From Pocillopora damicornis (lineage: Eukaryota), in NCBI RefSeq assembly GCF_003704095.1, contig NW_020847472.1, forward strand, positions 310,001-374,000: a DNA stretch of 64,000 nucleotides, read 5' to 3'. A model generated the notes under the pieces. That model saw nothing but the letters and a program-made list of their open reading frames with translations. It was not told where the DNA came from and ran no database searches. Shown here one piece after another: positions 3,958 through 49,100 of this stretch. The position numbers and the translations under genes are program-made. Positions within the stretch are counted from its first letter, which is position 1, and the number at the start of each line of letters is the position of its first letter.

Positions 3958-6900
3958 CTAAACGTTTTCTGCCAATATTTCTGTCCCTTTACCTTCCAGA
4001 ACACCCAAAGCACAAACAGAGTATGCATCAGATCCCGACATTATATTCAAGACAAATACCCGCGTATTTCCTTTAGAAAGATGAATGATATTAGAAGCTG
4101 TTTGAAGCTTGCCGCGAACACCACCTGTGACGTCATGTTCAAGGCTTGATGTTGTTATGGCGTTAGAAAATCCCCCATCGGATTTAACAAACACTTCTCT
4201 AAGTAATGATGCATCTAGAGATGGGATAGTAAAGGTGGATCAGCAATGCTGAAAGCTTTATGTGAGTTAGTAGAATAAGAAAGTTAGTGAGCGTTAAACT
4301 AGGTAATGAGAGAACGACAGATTTTCTTTTCCTGTCAAGGTCCATCTTATTTTGAGGAAAAAAATTATCAGTAATACAAGTGACCCTCTAGTCCCTGGCC
4401 CTAAAATCTAAAATATCCCTTTACCTGGTTTTTCTGGAGGCTTGTCAAAAATCCCATCTACATCTGTCAAAAACACAACCCGTCTGGGTCGAAGCTCTTC
4501 CACCAGTTTCTAAAAGTCATAGAGAGAGATATCACATACTGAGACCTACATATCGCCCGAGAGCCGTCCTAGAACCCATTTTTAACAAAATACATAAATG
4601 AACAGTCTTTCAGGCACAGATATCTAATGGCACCCTGCCCTGTGGCAAACAAAATAATTTGGTTTTATCAACTGAGTTGAGCCTGTGATAAGGTAAATTG
4701 GCCACCGTAAAGAGTTTCGCGCGTCAGCCCTTCGTCAGAGCGAAATGATCCATCTGAGAGAAGTGCCTGTAGTAGACAGTTCCCTCTTCTGAATGTCCCT
4801 TTAATACACGAGACTTGACGATTGAGGTATTTTTAAAAAAACTACAGGCCGCAGTTTGCAGTCTGCTGTTTAGCATGTCCTCGCTTCTCTCATTTAGATT
4901 CGTGGATACTTGTTTACACCTAAATCTTTAACATAAGAGTTCCGCGCGGCGCGTTAACATAATTTTTTTATTATTTTCTTTTACTCGCCCGACGGACTCC
5001 GCCGAAAAGGGGGACTGCTCGTAATCTAATCTTGTCTAATCACCAGGACAAACCTCAATGATTTTGTCTCCACTCAGTATAGCACAACTCTGTGCATCAT
5101 CTAATACACAGTCACCATGGAGAACTGGCACAAAACCCTCTTGCAAAAGTTCTATGATTGGGCTTAATGTCACTCTGTTGACACGGCCTTTCCTTGTTAC
5201 CCATGATCCACAAGGCTTCAATAACACAGAGAAAAAAGGAAAAGAAAGCCATTACTTTACGATTCTAACTGATATTCCACNNNNNNNNNNNNNNNNNNNN
5301 NNNNNNNNNNNNNNNNNNNNNNNNNNNNNNNNNNNNNNNNNNNNNNNNNNNNNNNNNNNNNNNNNNNNNNNNNNNNNNNNNNNNNNNNNNNNNNNNNNNN
5401 NNNNNNNNNNNNNNNNNGGGAATAACCAAGTTGGTATCACTCCAGATAAAAAAATCAGTATCACTCCAGATATTATAGGAGCAGTCAGTGTGTTTCAAAC
5501 CATCTGAAATTCTTTCTTCACGTGCAGTTGAAGATTCTAGTTTTTTAAGTTTCAGAAGAAACTTAGGAATTGTAATAACAGCCAACTACATGTACCAACT
5601 TCAACTTAAAGCGACCCACAGTTGGTGACACTGTAAACAGTTTTACACGGGTGGAATGGACATTCCTTGCCAATCAAAGCTTAGTTGCTTAAGAAAGGCG
5701 ACTTTAGACCGGTTTAAAGGTCTCTTAACAAAGAAGATTTAATGCCACTCAACAGCAAGAAATATTACCTACTGCTATGAGCAAAAACGGCTCCTTTAGA
5801 AACCACCAAATTTGCAAAGCAATGATCAATGTGTAGCACATTTTCCATGGATAAGCCACATCCCTGATTTGTTACAAAACTTTTGGAAGAAAGGGTGCCT
5901 GTGTTAATAGTAATCAACCCATGTTAATGGTAATGATGAGGTATTCAATCAAAGGAAACGAATAAACATGCTTCTTCTGTTATGTTTTACATATTTCCTC
6001 TCATTTTTACCATCAAAAAGAATATTGAAAAAAATAACATCGAAGTAGAGTTATAATTATAACTGCTGGCCAGTCGGTAAATTCTTTAAAAGCACCTAAC
6101 CAAGTCTGGTTAATATTATCAAATTGTGTTGGATTTCATATTGTGCAGGAAAATGTTTCTTCAACCTTAAATGCCCATAAGTGATAAAAATGAAACCTCT
6201 CCCCATAATATCCATAAGTTATCCAGCAAACAGGTAATGAGAATACTCAAACTTATGGAGTAGAAGCTGTTATCTTAATCTAACACCAAACTCTCATCAT
6301 TAATTTACAAGGAAATGTCTAGCAACTAGAGGGGAGGATTAACAATCAGATTTCAGGAGTTAAAAATGGTTGACAAACTAGACTATGTACCAATTCAAAA
6401 TGCAGATTTTTGAACCAAAGAGACTCCTTACATTCAATAAAACACAGTTAAGAAGGTTTTGCACTACATGTGCATGTAGTGTGTAGGTCTGCCATGATTA
6501 AGAGCATTGAACAAGCATTACACTTTGATAATTTTTCTCCACCTATAGGTTGTCACTCAACTACAAAACTGTACCTTCACCCAATATAAGTCATGTTTCA
6601 AGTGATAGAAAATAGTGACAGGATTCCAAATCAACAATCTACTACGGGAAGCTCTCTGCTCCAAAACTGCGGTTTCACAGGCCAGTTGGCAGCAGTACCA
6701 GATTGGTATAAGGAAGAAAAAGGTTTCAGTTTCATGGAAGCTCAAATCACTTTTTCAGGTTTAGCTTGCTGTGACGTAACTACAGCTTACATTTTGTAAT
6801 CAATAATTGTCAACCACTCATCTTAAAAGGACTCACATATGATTTATGATAAAATATGTTTTTCTCACTGAAGGATTATCACATTTGTTACCTAAAGGAC

Positions 6901-23237: not shown

Positions 23238-26200
23238 ATGACTTCGATATTGTGGTTGGCGTTTTTCAGTGAGTACAATTTTTACGAGACGTACAACTCC
23301 TAAGTTATAGTTACACCACTAAACACCTAGTAAATGCTTTTACTTCCTTAATTTGTCTCTTCCATCTTTATTTCCTTCAGCCGTTTCCTTTCTTTTTATT
23401 TTGCCTTTCTAAATTAATGCTTTCTGTTTCCTATCCTATCAAGGTATAATCCATTTTACTGCTGCTGGAAATATCTGTCGGACAGATTGCGAAGTTCAGT
23501 TTGTACCGAAAGGATGTTACAAAGATAATGGAGTAAGAGCTTATTCATTTTCATTTAAAAAAAATATCAAAATAAATGATTGGAAAAAGTTCAGTTGTAG
23601 CGTAGGAATTTATGAAATGCCGGAGCCAGATTTAAGAATGTGAACTAAATGTTATATGACCTGTACTAATTTAGTAAAAGTGAAGCGTGCGAAATTAAGC
23701 ACATGAGCATTCAATAGGAAAATTGTTGATTTGAAATAATAATGTTGTATTGTCATTTTTGTTTTATTCGTACCTTCTTCCACTTTTATCCCACAAATCA
23801 TTAAAGTTGCAAAGTGATACACTTGTTCTTCCTGACATGATTAAAACAAATACCTTGGTCGCTTGCAACCAGTGGAAGAAGCATTTGGCGGAATACTGCT
23901 AAACTAACTTTTCCAACAAAGTCCCTGGATTCAAAATTTCAAAGCCAATTCAGAAGCCCTTCTCACTTTCCATCCTGCTTCCTTCGCTTGAGTCCTGTTA
24001 TTCAACTGTTTGTTTGAAAAATAAACATTGAGTAAGTGGTCGGAAGGGGAAGGCGAGTATGCCAATACAGCCTGGGAACAAAACACCCAGGTTTCAAAGC
24101 ATTTTACCATTGGCTGTAAGTGTAGTTTTAAAACAATCCAATCCTCAACTGGTGAGGATTGGATCCTCAAGTGTTTAGTTTTCAGGAGGTTTCAGTCAAA
24201 TGAATTAATAAATGCAAAGCAAAATTTCTTTCAAATCTAATCAACAGAGAAATCGAGCGCTGCCTAATTACATCTACAACGAGCGGGATCCACGGGCCAA
24301 GAAAACCTATGGTGGCAGAAGAATTGATTGGTACAACTGGAATGAGTATTATCCCGGCTTTGCGTGTCGATGTGCAGAAAAAGCTAAGGCTCAAGGATAC
24401 GACCTTTTTGGTGTTCAGTTTTACGGTGAGATTTAAATTGAACTTCTTCCATTTATGATGTAATACAGCAAACCTTTAATTATTTCTTTAGTTTATCATT
24501 TGTCATTATACAGCGCTCTGTGTCGAGGAAGAGGCCGGCTCTTTAAGTTTTTTTTTATACGCTGAATCCTTACTTTTTGTCCTTAGGAGAATGTTGGGCT
24601 GGACATAGTGGAAAAAACAACTATTTAAAGTATGGCGAAGATGTGAAAGGATGTATTGAGGACAGTTTCTTGACATGCACTCCATATAGCCGTTACTGTG
24701 TGGGTAAACAGTGGCGCAATATGGTATATCAAATTGGTAAGTTTAGGTTTACTTCCTGGCCATATTTTGGAAAGACAAGAGTCAGAAGGTTGTAACCCAT
24801 GAACCGAGACCGAGCTGCACGGGAGACTCAAACAAAGACGGTGGAGAAAAAAGGTTTAAATTAAAAAGAAACTACTGGAATTTGGCAGAAAAAGTAGAAG
24901 ATTTACGCCATGTAGACTCTTCATATTTACGCGTTTTCATCACCTACGCTATGTTTGTTGAATCAAAACGAAAATCAAACCCCAAAGAGGGGCGGGGTGA
25001 CGGGTGCCTCTAGACCTCCCAGATAAGCCCTTTATTGATATCACCTCATTTATTTTGTGTTTGTTTTTTCTGATATCACAGTGGATGCTACATGCCCTAA
25101 GATCAACTTCGAAAGGGTTGGCTGCTTCGGAGATAAACACCAACCATTCGCAAGACCACTACCAGACTATCTTTTCAACGACAGGGATCCTAGCATTGAT
25201 AACTTCAGCGGAAGGAGAATCGATTGGCGAGCCTGGGATATTTATTTACCAGAATTCGCTTGTAGATGTGCCGAGGCGGCGAAGAAAGCAAATCACACTT
25301 TCTTTGGAGTGCAGTTCTACGGTAAGTGTAAGAAACCTTGCATTGGAGTTTTATTCACAGCGGTACTGGCTTATGCTGCATAGGTTGCGGTCAAAACGTT
25401 AGCGAGAAGCGTCTATGACAAACCCTCAACCTGAAATCTTACCTCAGAGGCCAAATCACATGTCCTAGTGATTTATGCGTTCATCGAGGATTATTCTTTT
25501 GACCTCATGAATTAATCTCAGCTTCCAAACTTTTAACCGTAGTCTTGACTTGACAATTCTCTATGCTTGTGCTGTTTGTGTTAAATTCGTTGTCTTTGTC
25601 TCAAAGGAGAGTGCTGGAGTGGCCTCAACAGCCATATGACCTACGACATCGATGGCCCACGACAAGGTGGCTGTATCAACCCGTGTTACCAGCCCTGTGC
25701 CCAACACAACAAGTTCTGTGCCGGAAGAAACTTTGAAAACTTTGTGTATAGAATAGGTAAGAACTTAGAGAACAAAAAAACAATGCAGTTTTGCTTCCCA
25801 TCATCATAAAGGATGTATACCAATTTATTAAGGGGGTAAGTTTCTAACGAAACTGTGGTGCTGCGTTGGTGGGAGAGTATAGCAGGAAATTTAGTGTTAA
25901 CAACTGGGTTGAAAACGTAAATTGGCTACCGTCACGGTAAAGGGTAAAAAAGCTGACGTTTCGAGCGTTAGCCCTTCGTCAGAGCGTTCGTATACCAATT
26001 TATTACCTACCGTGGTCTGGATCCCAAAGGGTAACAGAACCCTTCTAGAATTATCTTGAAATGAGCCATAAATTTTAATGCAAGCACCATCATTTTCTAA
26101 TACTTAGGAACCCCTCTGCACTTACGCGACATAGCTAAATGGTGGGAACGCGCGGTTCACAAACAGCTATTACTTTGTTTGGCGTAAAACTCATCATCTA

Positions 26201-28278
26201 AATCAACAAACCCTTTTCGAACAGATCACAATAGCATGAAAAAAAAAGGACTAAGTTTATGTCACGCTAAAATATTCGCGACAGATGAAGGAAAATGTCC
26301 TGAGGTTAAGAGGGTCCAGGAGGGCTGTTCGAAGCTGAGTTTAAAGGGCTGAGATAGAATTCTATGGTTCCTTCTGCATACTTCTCATTTACAACTGACG
26401 CATGCGTGCTAATTAAGGCGCCCAGAAGACGTTTTCGATGACCAATTTTCCTTACTTGATTGTGTACAAAAGAAGCGTTTCCGAAGTTTATGTAGCAATA
26501 AATTTGCTTATTAGTTTTCGAACCAGTTCGTTTTTTGCGGCAATGAAAACTGAAGGTTATTTCACGTGCATGATTTACCATCTGAAAGTGTCTTACAGGG
26601 ATCAAATATCTGCGCATGTACTGGTATGCTCGAAGAAAGCAGGAATTAAAAGGAGTTTTCGCCCCCAGTACTTTTAAGAATTATTTACCACCACTTACTC
26701 ACGCTTGTCATCAATTCTCCCTTTTTATTCGAGAATGATAAAATGTATTCATTCTTGTCCGTTCGTTTATCTCGCTGATTAAACTTTGCTTTGTTGGCTC
26801 TTTCGATTAAGCAACTGTTATCATGGCTTCTTTTATTATTCATAAAAATTTCAATTTACTTTCTTTATCATCTTCTAGTGGACGGTTCATGTGAAGTAGA
26901 TATCAGCCCCGTAGGTTGTTACAAAGAAGACTCTGCGATTCCCGCCATGGGAGAAATCTTTCACAACGAAGCTGCACCAGATAAGCCAAACTTTGTCGGA
27001 AATATGATCCAGTCTGTTGATAATTATGAAGCTTACTTCCCAGATTTCCTATGCAAGTGCGCCAGGAAGGCAAGAGAAAACGGCTGGGAGTATTTTGGAG
27101 TCAGAGAACTGGGTAGGGAAATAGGAAAAATATCTGATGGTTTTCTTGTTGGAGAAGTAACGATTTCGTGACTCGTCAATGCCGGCGCTACATGTTTGCG
27201 AGGGAAAGGGTTAGAGCTACTTCCGACACCAGCGTGAAATTCGCAACGTGGGATTGGAAACGATAAGCCTAGCCTTTTCGAAAACGGTGCTCGATCTCTG
27301 ATTGGCTTTCAGTGATCATTACTTCGTTTTGATTGGCCATAGTAATTATTGGTTAAGTTTTATATACCTGGATCAAATTTCTTTATTTTCCCCTGCGTTA
27401 ATTTTATTTTTTTGTAGGAATATGCGTACGAGGGAATCCCCCATCGAATTACGCCCGACACGGACCGTCCCAGCAGTGTTTTGTGGGAAATAGTTCCATA
27501 GCTTGTCCAAACGGTTCCAAATTATGCAGTGGCTTAAATTCAGAGGCTAACTACGTATACAAAGTAACCCTTCCAGGTGGGTGCAAAGTGTCCCTGGAAT
27601 TTCCATCAGTCTATGATGTTATTCTGTTCCGAGTCTGCCTCTGTAAGCTATACAAATCTTATCTACAATATTATTTCTTTAGTTTCTTTCGCGTACAGTT
27701 TTTGCTATTTTGTTGTATCAAATTACGAGATGATCGAGTCAAGTATTCGTAATTACATTATTTTGCCGTTTTAGTCACTTTGAAAACAACTCTTTCCACC
27801 TGTCTCAAGAAGATTTCCAACCTCTGATTTTCTCTATCTTCATCATAGGCAGCGAGTCTCGGTAGTTTAGATCACAGCGTGATTTTCGTCAATTTTTTAA
27901 TTTTCTTTTTAAATCTTAGCCTCCATTTCTTTAAATCTCTGCATCTGAATCTAATTTTGGTCGCTAATCTTTCAAAAATTTTCTATCTTACACTGTTAAG
28001 GCGAGAATGACAAGCTCGTCTGATATCGGATCATTTGAAGACTCGCGGGTTGGGATTGAAGTCCAAAAGAAAATTGAGCCGGCAAAATTTATTCAAAACA
28101 GAATTAAAGTCATGCATTAAGCTTTCAAAATTTTTACCCAACAGGAGAGACCCCAGTAAGAGACGTGGCTCAAGATATTCCAGATGAACGTCCTAAGGCC
28201 GTCCCACCGCCGATCTTTATGCGAAGCCAAAGGCACCCCAAAGCAAAAGCTCACCTATATGGAAAAAGGCTTTTGTGA
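23238..28278 (+). CDS. Secreted protein with three tandem WSC-like Cys-rich domains (about 454 aa)
   Basis: Exons 23238-23268, 23444-23532, 24248-24425, 24587-24736, 25082-25321, 25607-25756, 26879-27112, 27418-27576 and probable last exon 28145-28278 (alternative short end 27849-27865). Signal peptide MTSILWLAFFSIIHFTAAG. Repeat pattern GC[YF]..CxCA..FGV..G.C..C..C..C.G..N.VY, with a phase-1 intron in the Gly codon after FGVQFY/FGVREL in all three repeats. Confidence 0.82.
25831..25989 (-). mobile_element. Short Penelope-like retro-insertion (family A) with 16-bp target-site duplication
   Basis: GTATACCAATTTATTA at 25815-25830 and 25990-26005. The body is shared with the copies at about 4655-4743 and 28771-28990. 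Confidence 0.75.
25952..25985 (-). ncRNA. Minimal type I hammerhead ribozyme motif with intact core
   Basis: Minus strand reads GCU CUGACGA A GGGC-UAAC-GCUC GAAA CG UC/AGC: CUGANGA and GAAA boxes, 4-bp helix II, GCU/AGC helix I, loopless palindromic ACGU helix III and a GUC cleavage triplet. Confidence 0.75.
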
Positions 28279-28770: not shown

Positions 28771-28990
28771 TTTGGTTTTATCAACCGAATTGATAAATGT
28801 AAACTAGCCACCGTTGAGAAATCTGAGCTGACGTGTCTAGCGTTAGCCCTTCGTCAGAGCGTAAGATAAAGGCTAACGCTCGAAGCATCAGCTTTACGGT
28901 GGCCAATTTACATTATCAACTAAGTTGATAAAACTAAATCATCTTACCACGGTGGTACCCTCCGGCGACCGAGCACCATAAACTTACCCT
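28771..28990. mobile_element. Family A Penelope-like remnant with two inverted arms and decayed hammerhead motifs
   Basis: 28771-28860 and 28870-28940 are inverted copies (ttttatcaac..ttga..gccaccg..gctgacg..cgttagcccttcgtcagagc). The GAAA box is mutated to GACA and GAAG. Confidence 0.65.
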
Positions 28991-46100: not shown

Positions 46101-49100
46101 AAATCCACCACAATCATACACAAACATGAAAATTTTCCTCGATCCTCGAAGTGACTGCTGCTTTACTTACAGTGCTTGCTCACATCCCACTGATTTACTA
46201 ATAGTGCCTGCTCACATACTGCTTTTACCAATCATCTTGTGAGGTTTACATGTAAGGATTTAATCTTTAATTCCCAAGATCTGACTGTTTATTCTCCCCT
46301 CTACCTGCTACACATTTCCTTGCAAATAAATCACAAAAATTAGGTGTCAGATCAATACTACTAACTTCTACCTGATAAGTTTGAGAATTCTCATAACATG
46401 TTGGCTGAATAATGTGTGGATTTTATAGGGAGAAGTTACATGTTAATCACCAATGGGAGTTAAAGGGTTATTAAAGGAATGTGCTTAATTAAGTTTGCTC
46501 ACATCTGAATTTTGTTGAACCAGTTGGCCTTCGGAGATATGTGAAACTTTGTAATATTGTTTTTGTTTTCAGTTGATTGTTTCTAATGGATGTACACCAC
46601 TAGTTGATACTCTGGCCTTTTCACTTGCTGATGAAGGAGGTATTTCAATTTGTATGTATAATTATATTTTAAGTACAGGCAACAGTAACAACAGCAAAGT
46701 TTACTTTTACTCTTTATAATATACTCTTTCTCGTTCGTCCTATTTGTAGTTACAAAAGCTGTAATACAGTAAATGGTTTGAACCCAGGGTAACATGGAAT
46801 AGTGTGGTCTGATTGTCTGCTGGGGTGAGCATAGTCCTGAGAAAGACTGTTGTTGTGGTGATTGATGTTTTGACAACCTGAGTGGAAGTCATCATGAGAG
46901 TTGAGTGAATAGTTGTTGTCAGTTGAATGTCAACAATGACTGACAAGAACTCATTCAACTGACAACTGACAACAATTCACTTGACTTTGTTAATGACTTC
47001 CACCCAGGTTGTTGAAATGTCAGTCACCACTACTGACAACATTCCTCCTCAGGACTACACTCACCTGGACAATCAAACTACACTATTACAAAAACTGTAA
47101 TAATAAAATTAGGCCAATCCTCCTGGAATAATTACAGTGTGTAGGAGATCCAGGTAACCTACACTAAACAATGCATGGGATATGAATGCATAAGATATCA
47201 GTTGCACTTGGGTTGCATAGTAGTAGTCCACAGATTTTCAAACCCTGTTAGGAAGATCAGAAAAATAATTTGTGAATATAGACAGCTTGTTGTTAAAAAA
47301 ATGAGGAGCAATCTGCATCGCTTTCACTTGGTAGGATTTGTAACAAATAACTAAATTTCTTTAAGCGATGTTTAATTTTGAAAGTGTGACAGAAGCTACT
47401 CAGTCAATCCTCACTTGTTTCTAGAGCTCAGTTTCTCTGTAGTTGCTGATTGTGAACCAGTCGTGGTAAAATTTGAAAAATAATGCATTATTTTTCTGTA
47501 TTTGCACTGTGATCCAACAGAGGGTTTGCTGATCCCGTCTCCATTTTATGGATCATTTCTCCTGGATTTGCAGTCAAGATCAAGAGTGATACCTTTTCCA
47601 GTTGAACTTTCTAGTAAGGTTGGTGTCCTAACATATCAACTGGGTTTCTTGCAAGTTGACTTGGTGCTGTAGTTTGCAAAGACTTCTTAATTACTACTGA
47701 CAGTACTTTCTCAATGACAGTATTGATCTCTGGAATCAAGGCAGGAACTGTATGTTGACTTCTTTTATTTTATGTCTTAGATTGGTCCAGGAGAAACACA
47801 TCCGTTTGAACTTACTGTAGCAAGACTAGAATCTGCTTTAAAGAAAGCATCAGAGCAGGTACTCCTTAACTGAGAAGTTGTAGTTAATCACATATGCATA
47901 AAAGTAGAGTTGGAGAAATTTTTCACAAGAAATCACTTTTGATGCAGCGGGTTGGAAGTTAGTATTTAGCAGGTCAAAATCTAAAATACTTTGGCTTTGC
48001 TCTTAGAGTTTTTCAGTGCTTGGATTCAGGAAAAGTTGCCAAATTTTGACCTCAATCAAATTGAACATTCTCCAAGATGCCAATTCATGAACAACGAATC
48101 AAAGAGCAAATTTCAATCTGAGTTGAAAGCGATACAAATTGCTCCTCATTTTTTTAACAACAAGGTGTCTATATTCACAAATTATTTTGCTGATCTTCCT
48201 AACAGGGTGTGAAAATCCGTGGACTACTACTATGCAACCCAAACAACCCCCTGGGCAATATCTACTCCAAAGAACTCTTACAAGAATGTCTGAATTTTGC
48301 TTCCAGGTGAGGAAAGACGCGGTTTACTCTCACTTACTGCTAAAGGACACTGTAACAGCCAACCAGTTATTTTTTAGAGATTTATTAATTACTGTAGCAA
48401 GTCACAGAAAAGCTGGTGTTTTGCTCATCGTTGGGGCAGAGTAGGGGACTCTGGTTTGCGAGCGTATAAATGAAGTATAGATGTATATTGTTGGGCTTAG
48501 TCAGTACCTGAACAACTGCGCACCTACCCCTCCCCTGACCCAACAACAGTCAACTGATGACAAGGTTGCGTTAATTTTAGGTTAGGGGAGGGGTAACTGC
48601 GCAGTTGCGCAGGTACAAACACTAATTCACTTAACTTCACTCAAGAACTGAATAGGATATTGCGAATTGCGAAGGTCACAAAAAGGAAAGGAACACAGTT
48701 GCGAGTGGAATCACAACGATCATTGAAATGGGAATCTTAGGGTTAGATCCTTGATTCGAACAAACTATTTCTAATTTATTGGGAAAATGAAACCGATGTT
48801 AAAAAATTCCTTAGATTTCCTTCTTTGTTGGAGTATGAAAGCTTACTTGTGATTTCTTTACTGTTTTAGACATTCTCTACATGTCATCGTAGACGAGATA
48901 TACATGATGTGCGGATACAGAGAGGGTTGTTCTGTGACAAATGTGATGAGTTTAAAAAAGTGAGTCACTTGTGCAGGGTTTTTCTCTTGATACGATATTT
49001 TTTCGCTGCTGGTGGCTTTCATCGGTGTCTTTGCTAAGAATTTACATGATTTGGCTGCATCCCCAAACACGATTTTCGGTATGTTAACTTTCTCCTCTCT

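What the first reader, a model, noticed from the sequence alone, without database searches (positions are those of the whole stretch)
25815..26005. 159-bp retro-insertion carrying an intact minimal hammerhead ribozyme, with a perfect 16-bp TSD
Seen: GTATACCAATTTATTA flanks both sides of 25831-25989, and the 5' end of the insert (minus strand) reads GCU-CUGACGA-A-GGGC(UAAC)GCUC-GAAA-CG-UC/AGC. Known: minimal type I hammerheads whose helix III is reduced to a short palindrome are typical of Penelope-like element terminal repeats and are thought to cleave as dimers; long TSDs indicate target-primed reverse transcription. Inference: a young non-autonomous ribozyme-bearing retro-element, antisense in an intron of the WSC-like gene, with predicted cleavage between 25955 and 25954. 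It is invisible to ORF-based annotation.
Basis: partly seen in the sequence, partly recalled or inferred. Interest (0 to 1): 0.8.

Follow-up and report, generated by a model that had tools for sequence, protein, structure and literature searches.

The report
Truncated Penelope retrotransposon copy with hammerhead
This 159-bp insert is a short copy of the tail end of a Penelope-like retrotransposon carrying that family's usual minimal hammerhead-ribozyme motif; it is one of well over a thousand such copies in this coral genome and an ordinary example of a known kind.

Summary
A perfect 16-bp direct repeat (25815-25830 and 25990-26005) flanks a 159-bp insert. The minus strand of the insert begins with a complete minimal type I hammerhead motif, and the predicted cut lies between 25955 and 25954.

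The insert belongs to a large family in this 234-Mb coral genome: over 2,000 first-look candidates and 1,274 motif matches against 30 for the control pattern. Longer, 5'-truncated copies carry a reverse transcriptase, a CX4CxxC linker and a GIY-YIG endonuclease in one frame, ending about 95 nt before the hammerhead. That makes it an endonuclease-positive Penelope-like element (PLE). Other PLE hallmarks are also present:
- head-to-head inverted partner copies
- two alternative 3' ends (a "tail")
- target-site duplications of 7-16 bp

An RNA contig shows that the insert sits antisense in a 1,122-nt intron of an expressed gene. DNA contigs from three other studies contain insert/flank junctions, and no empty allele was seen.

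Catalysis is untested. Within-genome copies show no covariation, the motif is no better conserved than its flanks, and the predicted fold favours an inactive hairpin.

Minimal hammerheads in PLEs, including in stony corals, are published. An earlier follow-up in this scan (s1-762920) reached the same reading for another copy in this genome. This is a new member of a known kind and of low interest.

The parts
25815..25830 (.). Left copy of the 16-bp target-site duplication GTATACCAATTTATTA
   Evidence: 16/16 identical to 25990-26005
25831..25989 (-). 159-bp retro-insertion: one terminal (pLTR-type) unit of the PLE family, running from the start of the hammerhead to the long 3' end ...ACTTACCCCCT
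   Evidence: homologous over its whole length to more than 50 scored copies (2,260 first-look candidates)
25990..26005 (.). Right copy of the target-site duplication
25948..25989 (-). Minimal type I hammerhead motif. Helix I 5' strand 25989-25983; CUGACGA 25982-25976; unpaired A 25975; helix II 25974-25971 with 25966-25963; loop UAAC 25970-25967; GAAA 25962-25959; palindromic CG 25958-25957; U16.1 25956; C17 25955; helix I 3' strand 25954-25948
   Evidence: sequence; identical to the main-family sequence; its features match those published for PLE minimal hammerheads (PMC4209133)
25954..25955 (-). Predicted scissile bond, after C17 (25955) and before A (25954)
   Evidence: Inferred from hammerhead numbering applied; no cleavage data
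25933..25938 (-). 6-nt insertion (ACCGTG) private to this copy
   Evidence: the 20-mer spanning it occurs only once in the genome
25840..25853 (-). Short stem-loop GUUUC-GUUA-GAAAC just before the 3' end, in the AC-rich 'tail' segment
   Evidence: the position resembles the AC-rich stem-loop where a PLE reverse transcriptase initiates (PMC11167929); inferred
25607..25756 (+). Upstream exon of the host gene
   Evidence: RNA contig record 9 of run X16
25757..26878 (+). 1,122-nt GT..AG intron of the host gene containing the insert, which starts 58 nt after the 5' splice site
   Evidence: joint 25753->26876 (cut +3), depth 567
26879..27113 (+). Downstream exon of the host gene

Best explanation
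The insert is a dead-on-arrival short retrocopy of the terminal unit of an endonuclease-positive Penelope-like retrotransposon (PLE).

Proposed mechanism:
1. The PLE protein (reverse transcriptase plus GIY-YIG endonuclease) made staggered cuts in an AT-rich intron target.
2. It primed reverse transcription on the cut DNA, starting at an internal site near ...ACUUACCCC of a family RNA.
3. It copied to a 5' end that lies at the first bases of the hammerhead.
4. Repair of the 16-nt stagger produced the target-site duplication.

Shown: the duplication, family membership, the linkage to RT and GIY-YIG, the intron position and the orientation.

Inferred: the reverse-transcription steps. Also inferred is that the discrete 5' end reflects a transcript starting about 30 nt downstream of a conserved TATAAA in the element's 3' UTR.

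The hammerhead motif is the family's normal one. In this copy it is a lone monomer on the strand antisense to the host gene. It therefore cannot cut the host pre-mRNA and cannot build helix III by itself. It most likely does nothing here.
For: - **Perfect duplication:** 16 bp on each side of the insert.
- **Abundance:** 58 scored matches from 2,260 first-look candidates, and 1,274 motif matches against 30 control matches.
- **Truncation series:** Copies with variable 5' truncation run up into an ORF whose C-terminus matches GIY-YIG, with RVT_1 upstream in the same frame. Candidate numbers fall from the unit (2,260) to the endonuclease C-terminus (1,272) to the mid-RT region (325).
- **Inverted partners and two 3' ends:** Head-to-head inverted partners end at a shorter 3' site than the main copies. 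This matches the published PLE 'tail', extension from both DNA strands, and inverted 5'-truncated copies (PMC11167929, PMC8557442).
- **Variable duplications:** 7-16 bp in other solo copies.
- **Discrete 5' end:** 22 of 29 whole-unit copies end 1-12 nt upstream of the hammerhead.
- **Intron position:** A spliced RNA contig places the insert in an intron of a plus-strand gene.
- **Motif features:** The extra base after A9, the G10.1-C11.1 pair and the palindromic helix III are those listed for PLE minimal hammerheads.
Against: - No full-length element with both terminal repeats was recovered.
- Pfam scores are borderline: RVT_1 scored 28.9-30.6 against a cutoff of 29.6, and GIY-YIG 18.5-21.4 against 22.6.
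- The transcription-start explanation for the discrete 5' end rests on position alone, because only contigs, not raw reads, were available.
- The 29-copy sample came from the top hits to the full-length query, so it is biased towards copies that contain the whole unit.
Confidence: 0.9

Rival explanations
1. The motif in this copy is a working self-cleaving ribozyme. It would pair through ACGU with a second family transcript (a double hammerhead), cut after C at 25955, and so matter for RNA processing at this locus.
For: All core positions are intact and identical to the family's main sequence. The helix positions form standard pairs in 86.5% of cells, against 19-44% when the partners are slid. 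The self-complementary ACGU fits the published dimer model. Related PLE hammerheads cleave weakly in vitro as dimers, and the anole element PAc's hammerhead is inactivated by core mutations.
Against: - This is a single copy with no nearby partner, and it lies antisense to the only transcript seen.
- The predicted minimum-energy fold pairs CUGACG with CGUCAG and buries the core: -12.3 kcal/mol against -6.2 for the hammerhead fold. Two monomers are predicted to fold separately.
- There is no significant covariation (87-195 of 500 shuffles reach the observed values).
- The motif is no better conserved than its flanks (0.90 against 0.91 and 0.90).
- Copy 5' ends cluster at the start of the motif, not at the cut site.
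- Published work found that cleavage is not needed for PLE insertion in vitro and found no RNA-seq read ends at the cut site.
Confidence: 0.12
2. The unit is a separate non-autonomous 'retrozyme': short tandem repeats with a type I hammerhead, expressed as circular RNA and mobilised in trans, rather than a truncated PLE copy.
For: - Many copies are just the ~150-bp unit with a discrete 5' end.
- A 2026 preprint argues that animal retrozymes derive from PLE terminal repeats.
- One RNA contig (run X16, depth 552) joins the start of one unit, through 25 other letters, to the short 3' end of another.
Against: - None of the 58 and 55 scored matches shows a head-to-tail array. Paired copies are inverted.
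- The 25-nt spacer of that RNA contig occurs only three times in the genome, all on one contig.
- The unit is continuous with the ORF and 3' UTR in longer copies at about 98% identity.
- Coral retrozymes described so far carry canonical, efficiently cleaving hammerheads in 225-245-nt repeats.
Confidence: 0.06
3. The conserved element is mainly a structured hairpin or DNA palindrome (CTGACG...CGTCAG) with another role, such as binding the RT or acting as a promoter-proximal element just after the TATA box. On this view it has kept the hammerhead core only as an inherited relic.
For: - The extended hairpin is the predicted minimum-energy fold by about 6 kcal/mol.
- The motif sits at the discrete 5' end, about 30 nt after a conserved TATAAA.
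- The function of PLE hammerheads is unresolved in the literature, and whole PLE clades do without them.
Against: Thirteen fixed core positions in the correct arrangement, plus the PLE-specific extras, are very unlikely in a simple hairpin. The published RT-binding region of PAc lies downstream of the hammerhead. I have no direct data.
Confidence: 0.15

Closest known systems
Minimal type I hammerhead ribozymes of Penelope-like elements (Cervera & De la Pena 2014, PMC4209133)
   Same: Same core. Same unpaired base between A9 and 10.1, same G10.1-C11.1 pair, same short helix I, and helix III reduced to a palindrome (ACGU). The motif sits in the element's terminal repeat region, most copies are single truncated elements, and some occur as close pairs on opposite strands.
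   Different: Helix II is only 4 bp, whereas the Schistosoma families have 6-8 bp. N7 and the loop-3 bases make CUGACG fully complementary to CGUCAG, which favours an inactive hairpin. I do not know whether that holds for other PLE hammerheads.
Endonuclease-positive PLEs with a C-terminal GIY-YIG domain (Penelope/Poseidon, Neptune, Hydra clades; PMC8557442), and the anole element PAc (PMC11167929)
   Same: RT followed by GIY-YIG in one ORF. Cysteine and histidine pairs lie in and after the GIY-YIG region. Copies are 5'-truncated, inverted head-to-head partners occur, and the tail is present at one end only. Targets are AT-rich and duplications vary in length.
   Different: - The hammerhead lies about 95 nt after the stop codon and has no start codon in or near it. 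In PAc the ORF begins inside the hammerhead.
- The tail is about 50-55 nt here, not 30-40.
- The CX4CxxC linker suggests a Neptune-like clade, but I built no tree.
- No full-length copy was seen.
Metazoan non-LTR retrozymes (Cervera & de la Pena 2020, PMC7229834)
   Same: Both are short hammerhead-bearing retro-repeats, abundant in stony corals and dependent on a protein supplied in trans.
   Different: Retrozymes are tandem arrays carrying canonical, fast-cleaving hammerheads and are expressed as circular RNAs. This unit is dispersed or inverted, carries a minimal hammerhead, and is continuous with a PLE ORF.

Membership tests
Hammerhead ribozyme, minimal type I (PLE variant) | Conserved core CUGANGA ... 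GAAA ... with A15.1/U16.1 and a cleavable H17 | tested here: met
   CUGACGA, GAAA, A..U, C17 at 25955
Hammerhead ribozyme, minimal type I (PLE variant) | Helix II closed by G10.1-C11.1, with one unpaired base between A9 and 10.1 | tested here: met
   A + GGGC/GCUC (one G-U pair); 90.5% of cells paired across 29 copies
Hammerhead ribozyme, minimal type I (PLE variant) | Helix III absent or 1 bp, with a palindromic sequence that allows a dimer | tested here: met
   ACGU; CG in 19 of 29 copies. Most variants are CpG-decay products
Hammerhead ribozyme, minimal type I (PLE variant) | Helix I formed by the flanking strands | tested here: met
   GCU/AGC (93% of cells paired), then one mismatch and three more pairs in the window copy; short, as published
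Hammerhead ribozyme, minimal type I (PLE variant) | Covariation supporting the helices | tested here: inconclusive
   the observed values are reached by 87-195 of 500 shuffles. The copies are too alike, and their changes are mostly CpG decay
Hammerhead ribozyme, minimal type I (PLE variant) | Match to the curated Rfam hammerhead models | tested here: not met
   no hammerhead hit at the gathering threshold or at E<=10. I expect the curated models, built on canonical hammerheads, to score a helix III-less variant poorly, but I did not test that
Hammerhead ribozyme, minimal type I (PLE variant) | Self-cleavage | not testable with these tools
   Only contigs were available, so RNA ends cannot be seen. 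The predicted minimum-energy fold is an inactive hairpin
Penelope-like element, endonuclease-positive | Reverse transcriptase and GIY-YIG endonuclease in a single ORF | tested here: met
   RVT_1 (30.6 bits, cutoff 29.6) and GIY-YIG (21.4 bits, cutoff 22.6) in one frame in L067 and L068, with RYIDD, CX4CxxC and VIYCITC..YIG motifs. Pfam scores are borderline
Penelope-like element, endonuclease-positive | Hammerhead motif in the terminal repeat region near the 3' end | tested here: met
   the motif lies about 95 nt after the stop codon in copies spanning 46-95% amino-acid identity
Penelope-like element, endonuclease-positive | Inverted 5'-truncated partner copies, and a 'tail' at one end only | tested here: met
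   partners end at about position 106-112 of the 159-nt query, while main copies end at 157 or beyond
Penelope-like element, endonuclease-positive | Target-site duplications of variable length | tested here: met
   7-13 bp in other solo copies, 16 bp here
Penelope-like element, endonuclease-positive | Direct pseudo-LTRs flanking a full-length ORF (partial tandem) | tested here: inconclusive
   all copies examined were 5'-truncated, and no more genome DNA could be fetched
Metazoan non-LTR retrozyme | Head-to-tail tandem arrays of the unit | tested here: not met
   none among the scored matches. The one tandem-like RNA joint traces to a locus present three times on one contig

The most novel reading that the evidence does not exclude
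The ~150-nt solo units are not random truncations. They would be full-length cDNAs of a short RNA that starts at the first bases of the hammerhead, driven by a TATAAA box in the PLE's 3' UTR. The hammerhead would then sit at the extreme 5' end of the mobilised RNA, and the templates that get copied would be the uncleaved ones. This would make the unit a SINE-like parasite or by-product of the PLE. It would also give a genomic read-out that hammerhead cleavage is not used to define the ends of PLE copies.
Probability: 0.3. Interest if true: 0.4.

Novelty: new member of a known kind. Interest (0 to 1): 0.18.

Why it matters
It matters little in itself. Minimal hammerheads in PLE terminal repeats have been known since 2014. 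Thousands of minimal motifs have been reported in a stony coral genome. This copy is one of more than a thousand here, it sits antisense in an intron, and the host transcript splices normally across that intron.

The family as a whole has some modest value. It is very young: dozens of copies are 99-100% identical. It also shows discrete 5' ends, two 3' ends and inverted partners cleanly. That makes it a convenient natural data set for testing the recent in vitro model of PLE insertion (internal initiation and priming on both strands), and for asking what the hammerhead is for.

Tried and rejected
- **Rfam:** no hammerhead hit on the whole window at gathering thresholds, or on the 421-bp region at E<=10.
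- **Covariation:** no better than shuffles on 29 distinct copies.
- **Conservation of the motif against its flanks:** no difference. This is a weak test, because inserted copies decay neutrally. The CG-to-UA change in helix III that looked compensatory is just double CpG decay.
- **Retrozyme-like tandem arrays:** none found. An RNA contig with a back-joint traced to three loci on one contig.
- **Empty allele:** no contig skipping the insert appeared in the listed joints of three DNA runs, though only 15 of 68 joints were shown. The assembly has no second locus for the left flank.
- **Family expression:** the ratio of depth over the repeat to depth over single-copy flanks is similar in the RNA run and the DNA runs, so nothing can be said.
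- **Full-length element:** six candidate loci were all truncated or full of N. N stretches were left as they are.
- **WSC domain in the host gene:** no Pfam match at E<=1 with the exons searched separately. I did not build or search a joined spliced model.
- **Dimer fold:** RNAcofold cannot represent the double hammerhead, which is topologically a kissing interaction, so I have only a rough energy comparison.

Full report
**Observation**

The plus strand carries GTATACCAATTTATTA at 25815-25830 and again at 25990-26005, 16 of 16 identical, around exactly 159 bp. Read on the minus strand, the insert starts GAACGCU CUGACGA A GGGC UAAC GCUC GAAA CG U C AGCUUUUUU.

This supplies every conserved hammerhead position:
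- the core C3-A9, G12-A14, A15.1, U16.1 and C17
- a 4-bp helix II closed by G10.1-C11.1
- one unpaired A after A9
- helix I of GCU/AGC, followed by a mismatch and three more pairs
- the self-complementary ACGU where helix III should be

Rfam finds no hammerhead here, even at E<=10. I expect Rfam's models, built on canonical hammerheads, to score a variant without helix III poorly, but I did not test that.

The motif is not a chance match. The descriptor CTGANGA-N13-GAAA-NN-TH-N6-T occurs 1,274 times in the genome, against 30 for the same pattern read backwards.

**What the insert belongs to**

The window's assembly is 234 Mb in 4,393 contigs. The sequencing runs that hold this locus are labelled coral or marine metagenome.

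The 159 bp has 58 scored matches from 2,260 first-look candidates. Most of the best matches are 99-100% identical to each other, and 40 copies are 99-100% identical over 123 nt. The window copy differs from them by 5 substitutions, a 1-nt gap near its 5' end and a 6-nt insertion found nowhere else in the genome. Its hammerhead is identical to theirs.

Seven of the 29 other full-unit copies continue upstream for 0.3 to more than 1.1 kb with variable truncation points. That upstream sequence is the end of an ORF reading ...VIYCITCTYCNKLYIGETGRRLGDRFREH...NERFSFN*. It matches Pfam GIY-YIG and stops about 95 nt before the hammerhead.

In the longer copies L067 and L068, the same frame has an RVT_1 match upstream. 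It also has RYIDD, a KPTD...SSSHP stretch and a CX4CxxC linker ahead of the GIY-YIG region. The Pfam scores are borderline. An RT fused to a C-terminal GIY-YIG endonuclease is the defining architecture of endonuclease-positive Penelope-like elements (PMC8557442, PMC11167929).

Candidate counts fall from the terminal unit (2,260) to the endonuclease C-terminus (1,272) to the mid-RT region (325). This is the gradient that 5' truncation produces. I could not recover a full-length copy with both terminal repeats.

**Family anatomy**

- **Discrete 5' end.** In 22 of the 29 copies, similarity to the longer copies stops only 1-12 nt upstream of CGCUCUGACGA, mostly at 2-3 nt. The contig 'loose ends' at 25985/25986 in three DNA runs have heterogeneous continuations, which agrees. 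The boundary lies about 30 nt downstream of a conserved TATAAA in the 3' UTR. I infer, without RNA-end data, that many solo units are copies of a short transcript that begins there. The sample is biased towards whole-unit copies.
- **No excess of 5' ends at the predicted cut site.** Partner copies start at positions 1-21 of the 159-nt query, with single cases at 34, 59 and 71. The templates that were copied still carried an uncut hammerhead.
- **Two 3' ends.** There is a short one at ...AAAUUACC and a long one about 50-55 nt further on, at ...ACUUACCCC followed by 0-11 nt of UUUAUUCAUUU.
- **Inverted partners.** Many copies have a head-to-head inverted partner whose outer end is the short site, while the main copy ends at the long site.
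- **Variable duplications.** Solo copies have target-site duplications of 7-13 bp; the window copy has 16.

These features match published PLE traits: inverted 5'-truncated copies, a tail present at one end only, two RT initiation sites internal to the RNA, extension from both DNA strands, and AT-rich targets (PMC8557442 and PMC11167929).

**Local context**

A 1,153-nt contig from a poly(A) RNA run joins 25081-25320, 25606-25753 and 26876-27113 with GT..AG ends on the plus strand. The insert therefore lies in a 1,122-nt intron (25757-26878 after the stated cut offsets), 58 nt after the 5' splice site. It is antisense to the gene, and the one spliced RNA contig joins the flanking exons normally.

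The host pre-mRNA carries the complement of the hammerhead, not the hammerhead itself. Pfam gave no match, WSC or otherwise, for the exon translations searched one by one. I did not search a joined model.

DNA contigs from runs of three other studies run from unique flank 29-30 nt into the insert: on both sides in X3 and X13, and on the right side in X9. They stop there, as 31-mer unitigs do at repeats. No contig skipping the insert was listed. The assembly has no second locus for the left flank. The insertion is therefore shared among samples rather than private, and no empty allele was seen. This is not proof of fixation.

**Is the ribozyme functional?**

Computation does not support activity, and does not exclude it.
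- **Covariation.** Across 29 distinct copies, the helices form standard pairs in 86.5% of cells, against 19-44% for slid partners. Covariation is no better than shuffles.
- **Nature of the variation.** Most of it is CpG decay: CG to UG or CA in loop 3, and C11.1 to U.
- **Conservation.** The motif is no better conserved than the ORF tail or the 3' UTR (0.90 against 0.90 and 0.91). It is a weak test, though, because inserted copies decay neutrally.
- **Folding.** CUGACG is fully complementary to CGUCAG. The predicted minimum-energy fold of the monomer is an extended hairpin that buries the core, at -12.3 kcal/mol against -6.2 for the hammerhead fold. Two monomers are predicted to fold separately.

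Published work fits this picture. PLE minimal hammerheads cleave poorly in vitro, and only as dimers or with an engineered helix III (PMC4209133). For the anole element PAc, hammerhead mutants do not affect insertion in vitro, and no RNA-seq reads end at the cut site (PMC11167929).

A lone antisense monomer in an intron is very unlikely to be doing anything.

**Comparison and novelty**

Cervera and De la Pena (2014) described these same features in PLE terminal repeats from cnidarians to vertebrates: the extra base after A9, the G10.1-C11.1 pair, a palindromic helix III, mostly single truncated copies, and some close pairs on opposite strands. Their 2020 paper reports more than 6,000 type I motifs in the stony coral Acropora millepora, most of them of the PLE-like minimal kind.

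The retrozyme alternative is not supported, because I found no tandem arrays.

The scan holds 110 notes that mention 'hammerhead'; the eight shown are from this genome. An earlier follow-up (s1-762920) reached the same reading for another copy. I reached mine independently before seeing it.

**Verdict**

This is a new member of a known kind and of low interest.

The one point that may be worth a specialist's time is the family-level pattern. It combines a discrete 5' end at the hammerhead start downstream of a TATA box, uncut templates, and two 3' ends. It could be used to test current models of PLE insertion.

PLEs are cellular retrotransposons, not viruses.

Noticed in passing
window 28826-28939: An older, decayed head-to-head inverted pair of the same PLE family. 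The left arm is an inverted hammerhead start. After a 5-6 nt spacer, the right arm begins inside the hammerhead and ends at the short 3' site.
   Followed up: partly
window ~4640-4742 (minus strand): Another decayed copy of the family. A deletion removes the GUC/AGC cut-site region, and the copy ends at the short 3' end.
   Followed up: partly
window 25955-25982 (minus strand) and family-wide: CUGACG of the core is fully complementary to CGUCAG (loop 3, U16.1, C17 and the start of helix I). This gives a predicted inactive hairpin about 6 kcal/mol more stable than the hammerhead fold.
   Followed up: partly
L010:1465-1500 and the aligned copies: A conserved TATAAA (TATATA in some copies) lies 29-34 nt upstream of the point where most solo units begin. 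It may be a promoter in the PLE 3' UTR that fires into the terminal unit.
   Followed up: partly
window 25835-25841 (plus strand): The antisense of the element's 3' end reads GGTAAGT, a consensus 5' splice site in the host gene's orientation. The RNA contig shows it is not used.
   Followed up: partly
L070:2647-2678 and L070:6357-6388 (plus strand): Two direct copies, 3.7 kb apart, of a different hammerhead-like motif (CTGAAGA...GAAACGTC). They may be the terminal repeats of another PLE family.
   Followed up: no
genome contigs C32, C228, C335 (rows): A second repeated family matches the loose descriptor (CTGATGAT.TCTGAGAGTGCGAAA.ATC) but has no obvious helix II. It is probably a chance fit within a repeat.
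   Followed up: no
run X16, joint 25986->25884; genome C1583:18545, 50538, 52927: An RNA contig of depth 552 joins the hammerhead start of one unit, through 25 other letters, to the short 3' end of another unit. The spacer occurs only three times in the genome, all on contig C1583, so this is a transcribed locus rather than a tandem-repeat family.
   Followed up: partly
window 46750-47102: Another first-stage note (s1-779088) calls this a second hammerhead-bearing family. My simple scan of both strands for CUGANGA-N9-24-GAAA found no match there.
   Followed up: no
window 24212-27171 (plus strand): The host gene has repeated two-exon modules with the pattern GC[FY].D...C.C....FGVQ..GECW.G. Pfam gives no match at E<=1 when the exons are searched separately. 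A 71%-identical paralogous exon lies on contig C4125.
   Followed up: partly
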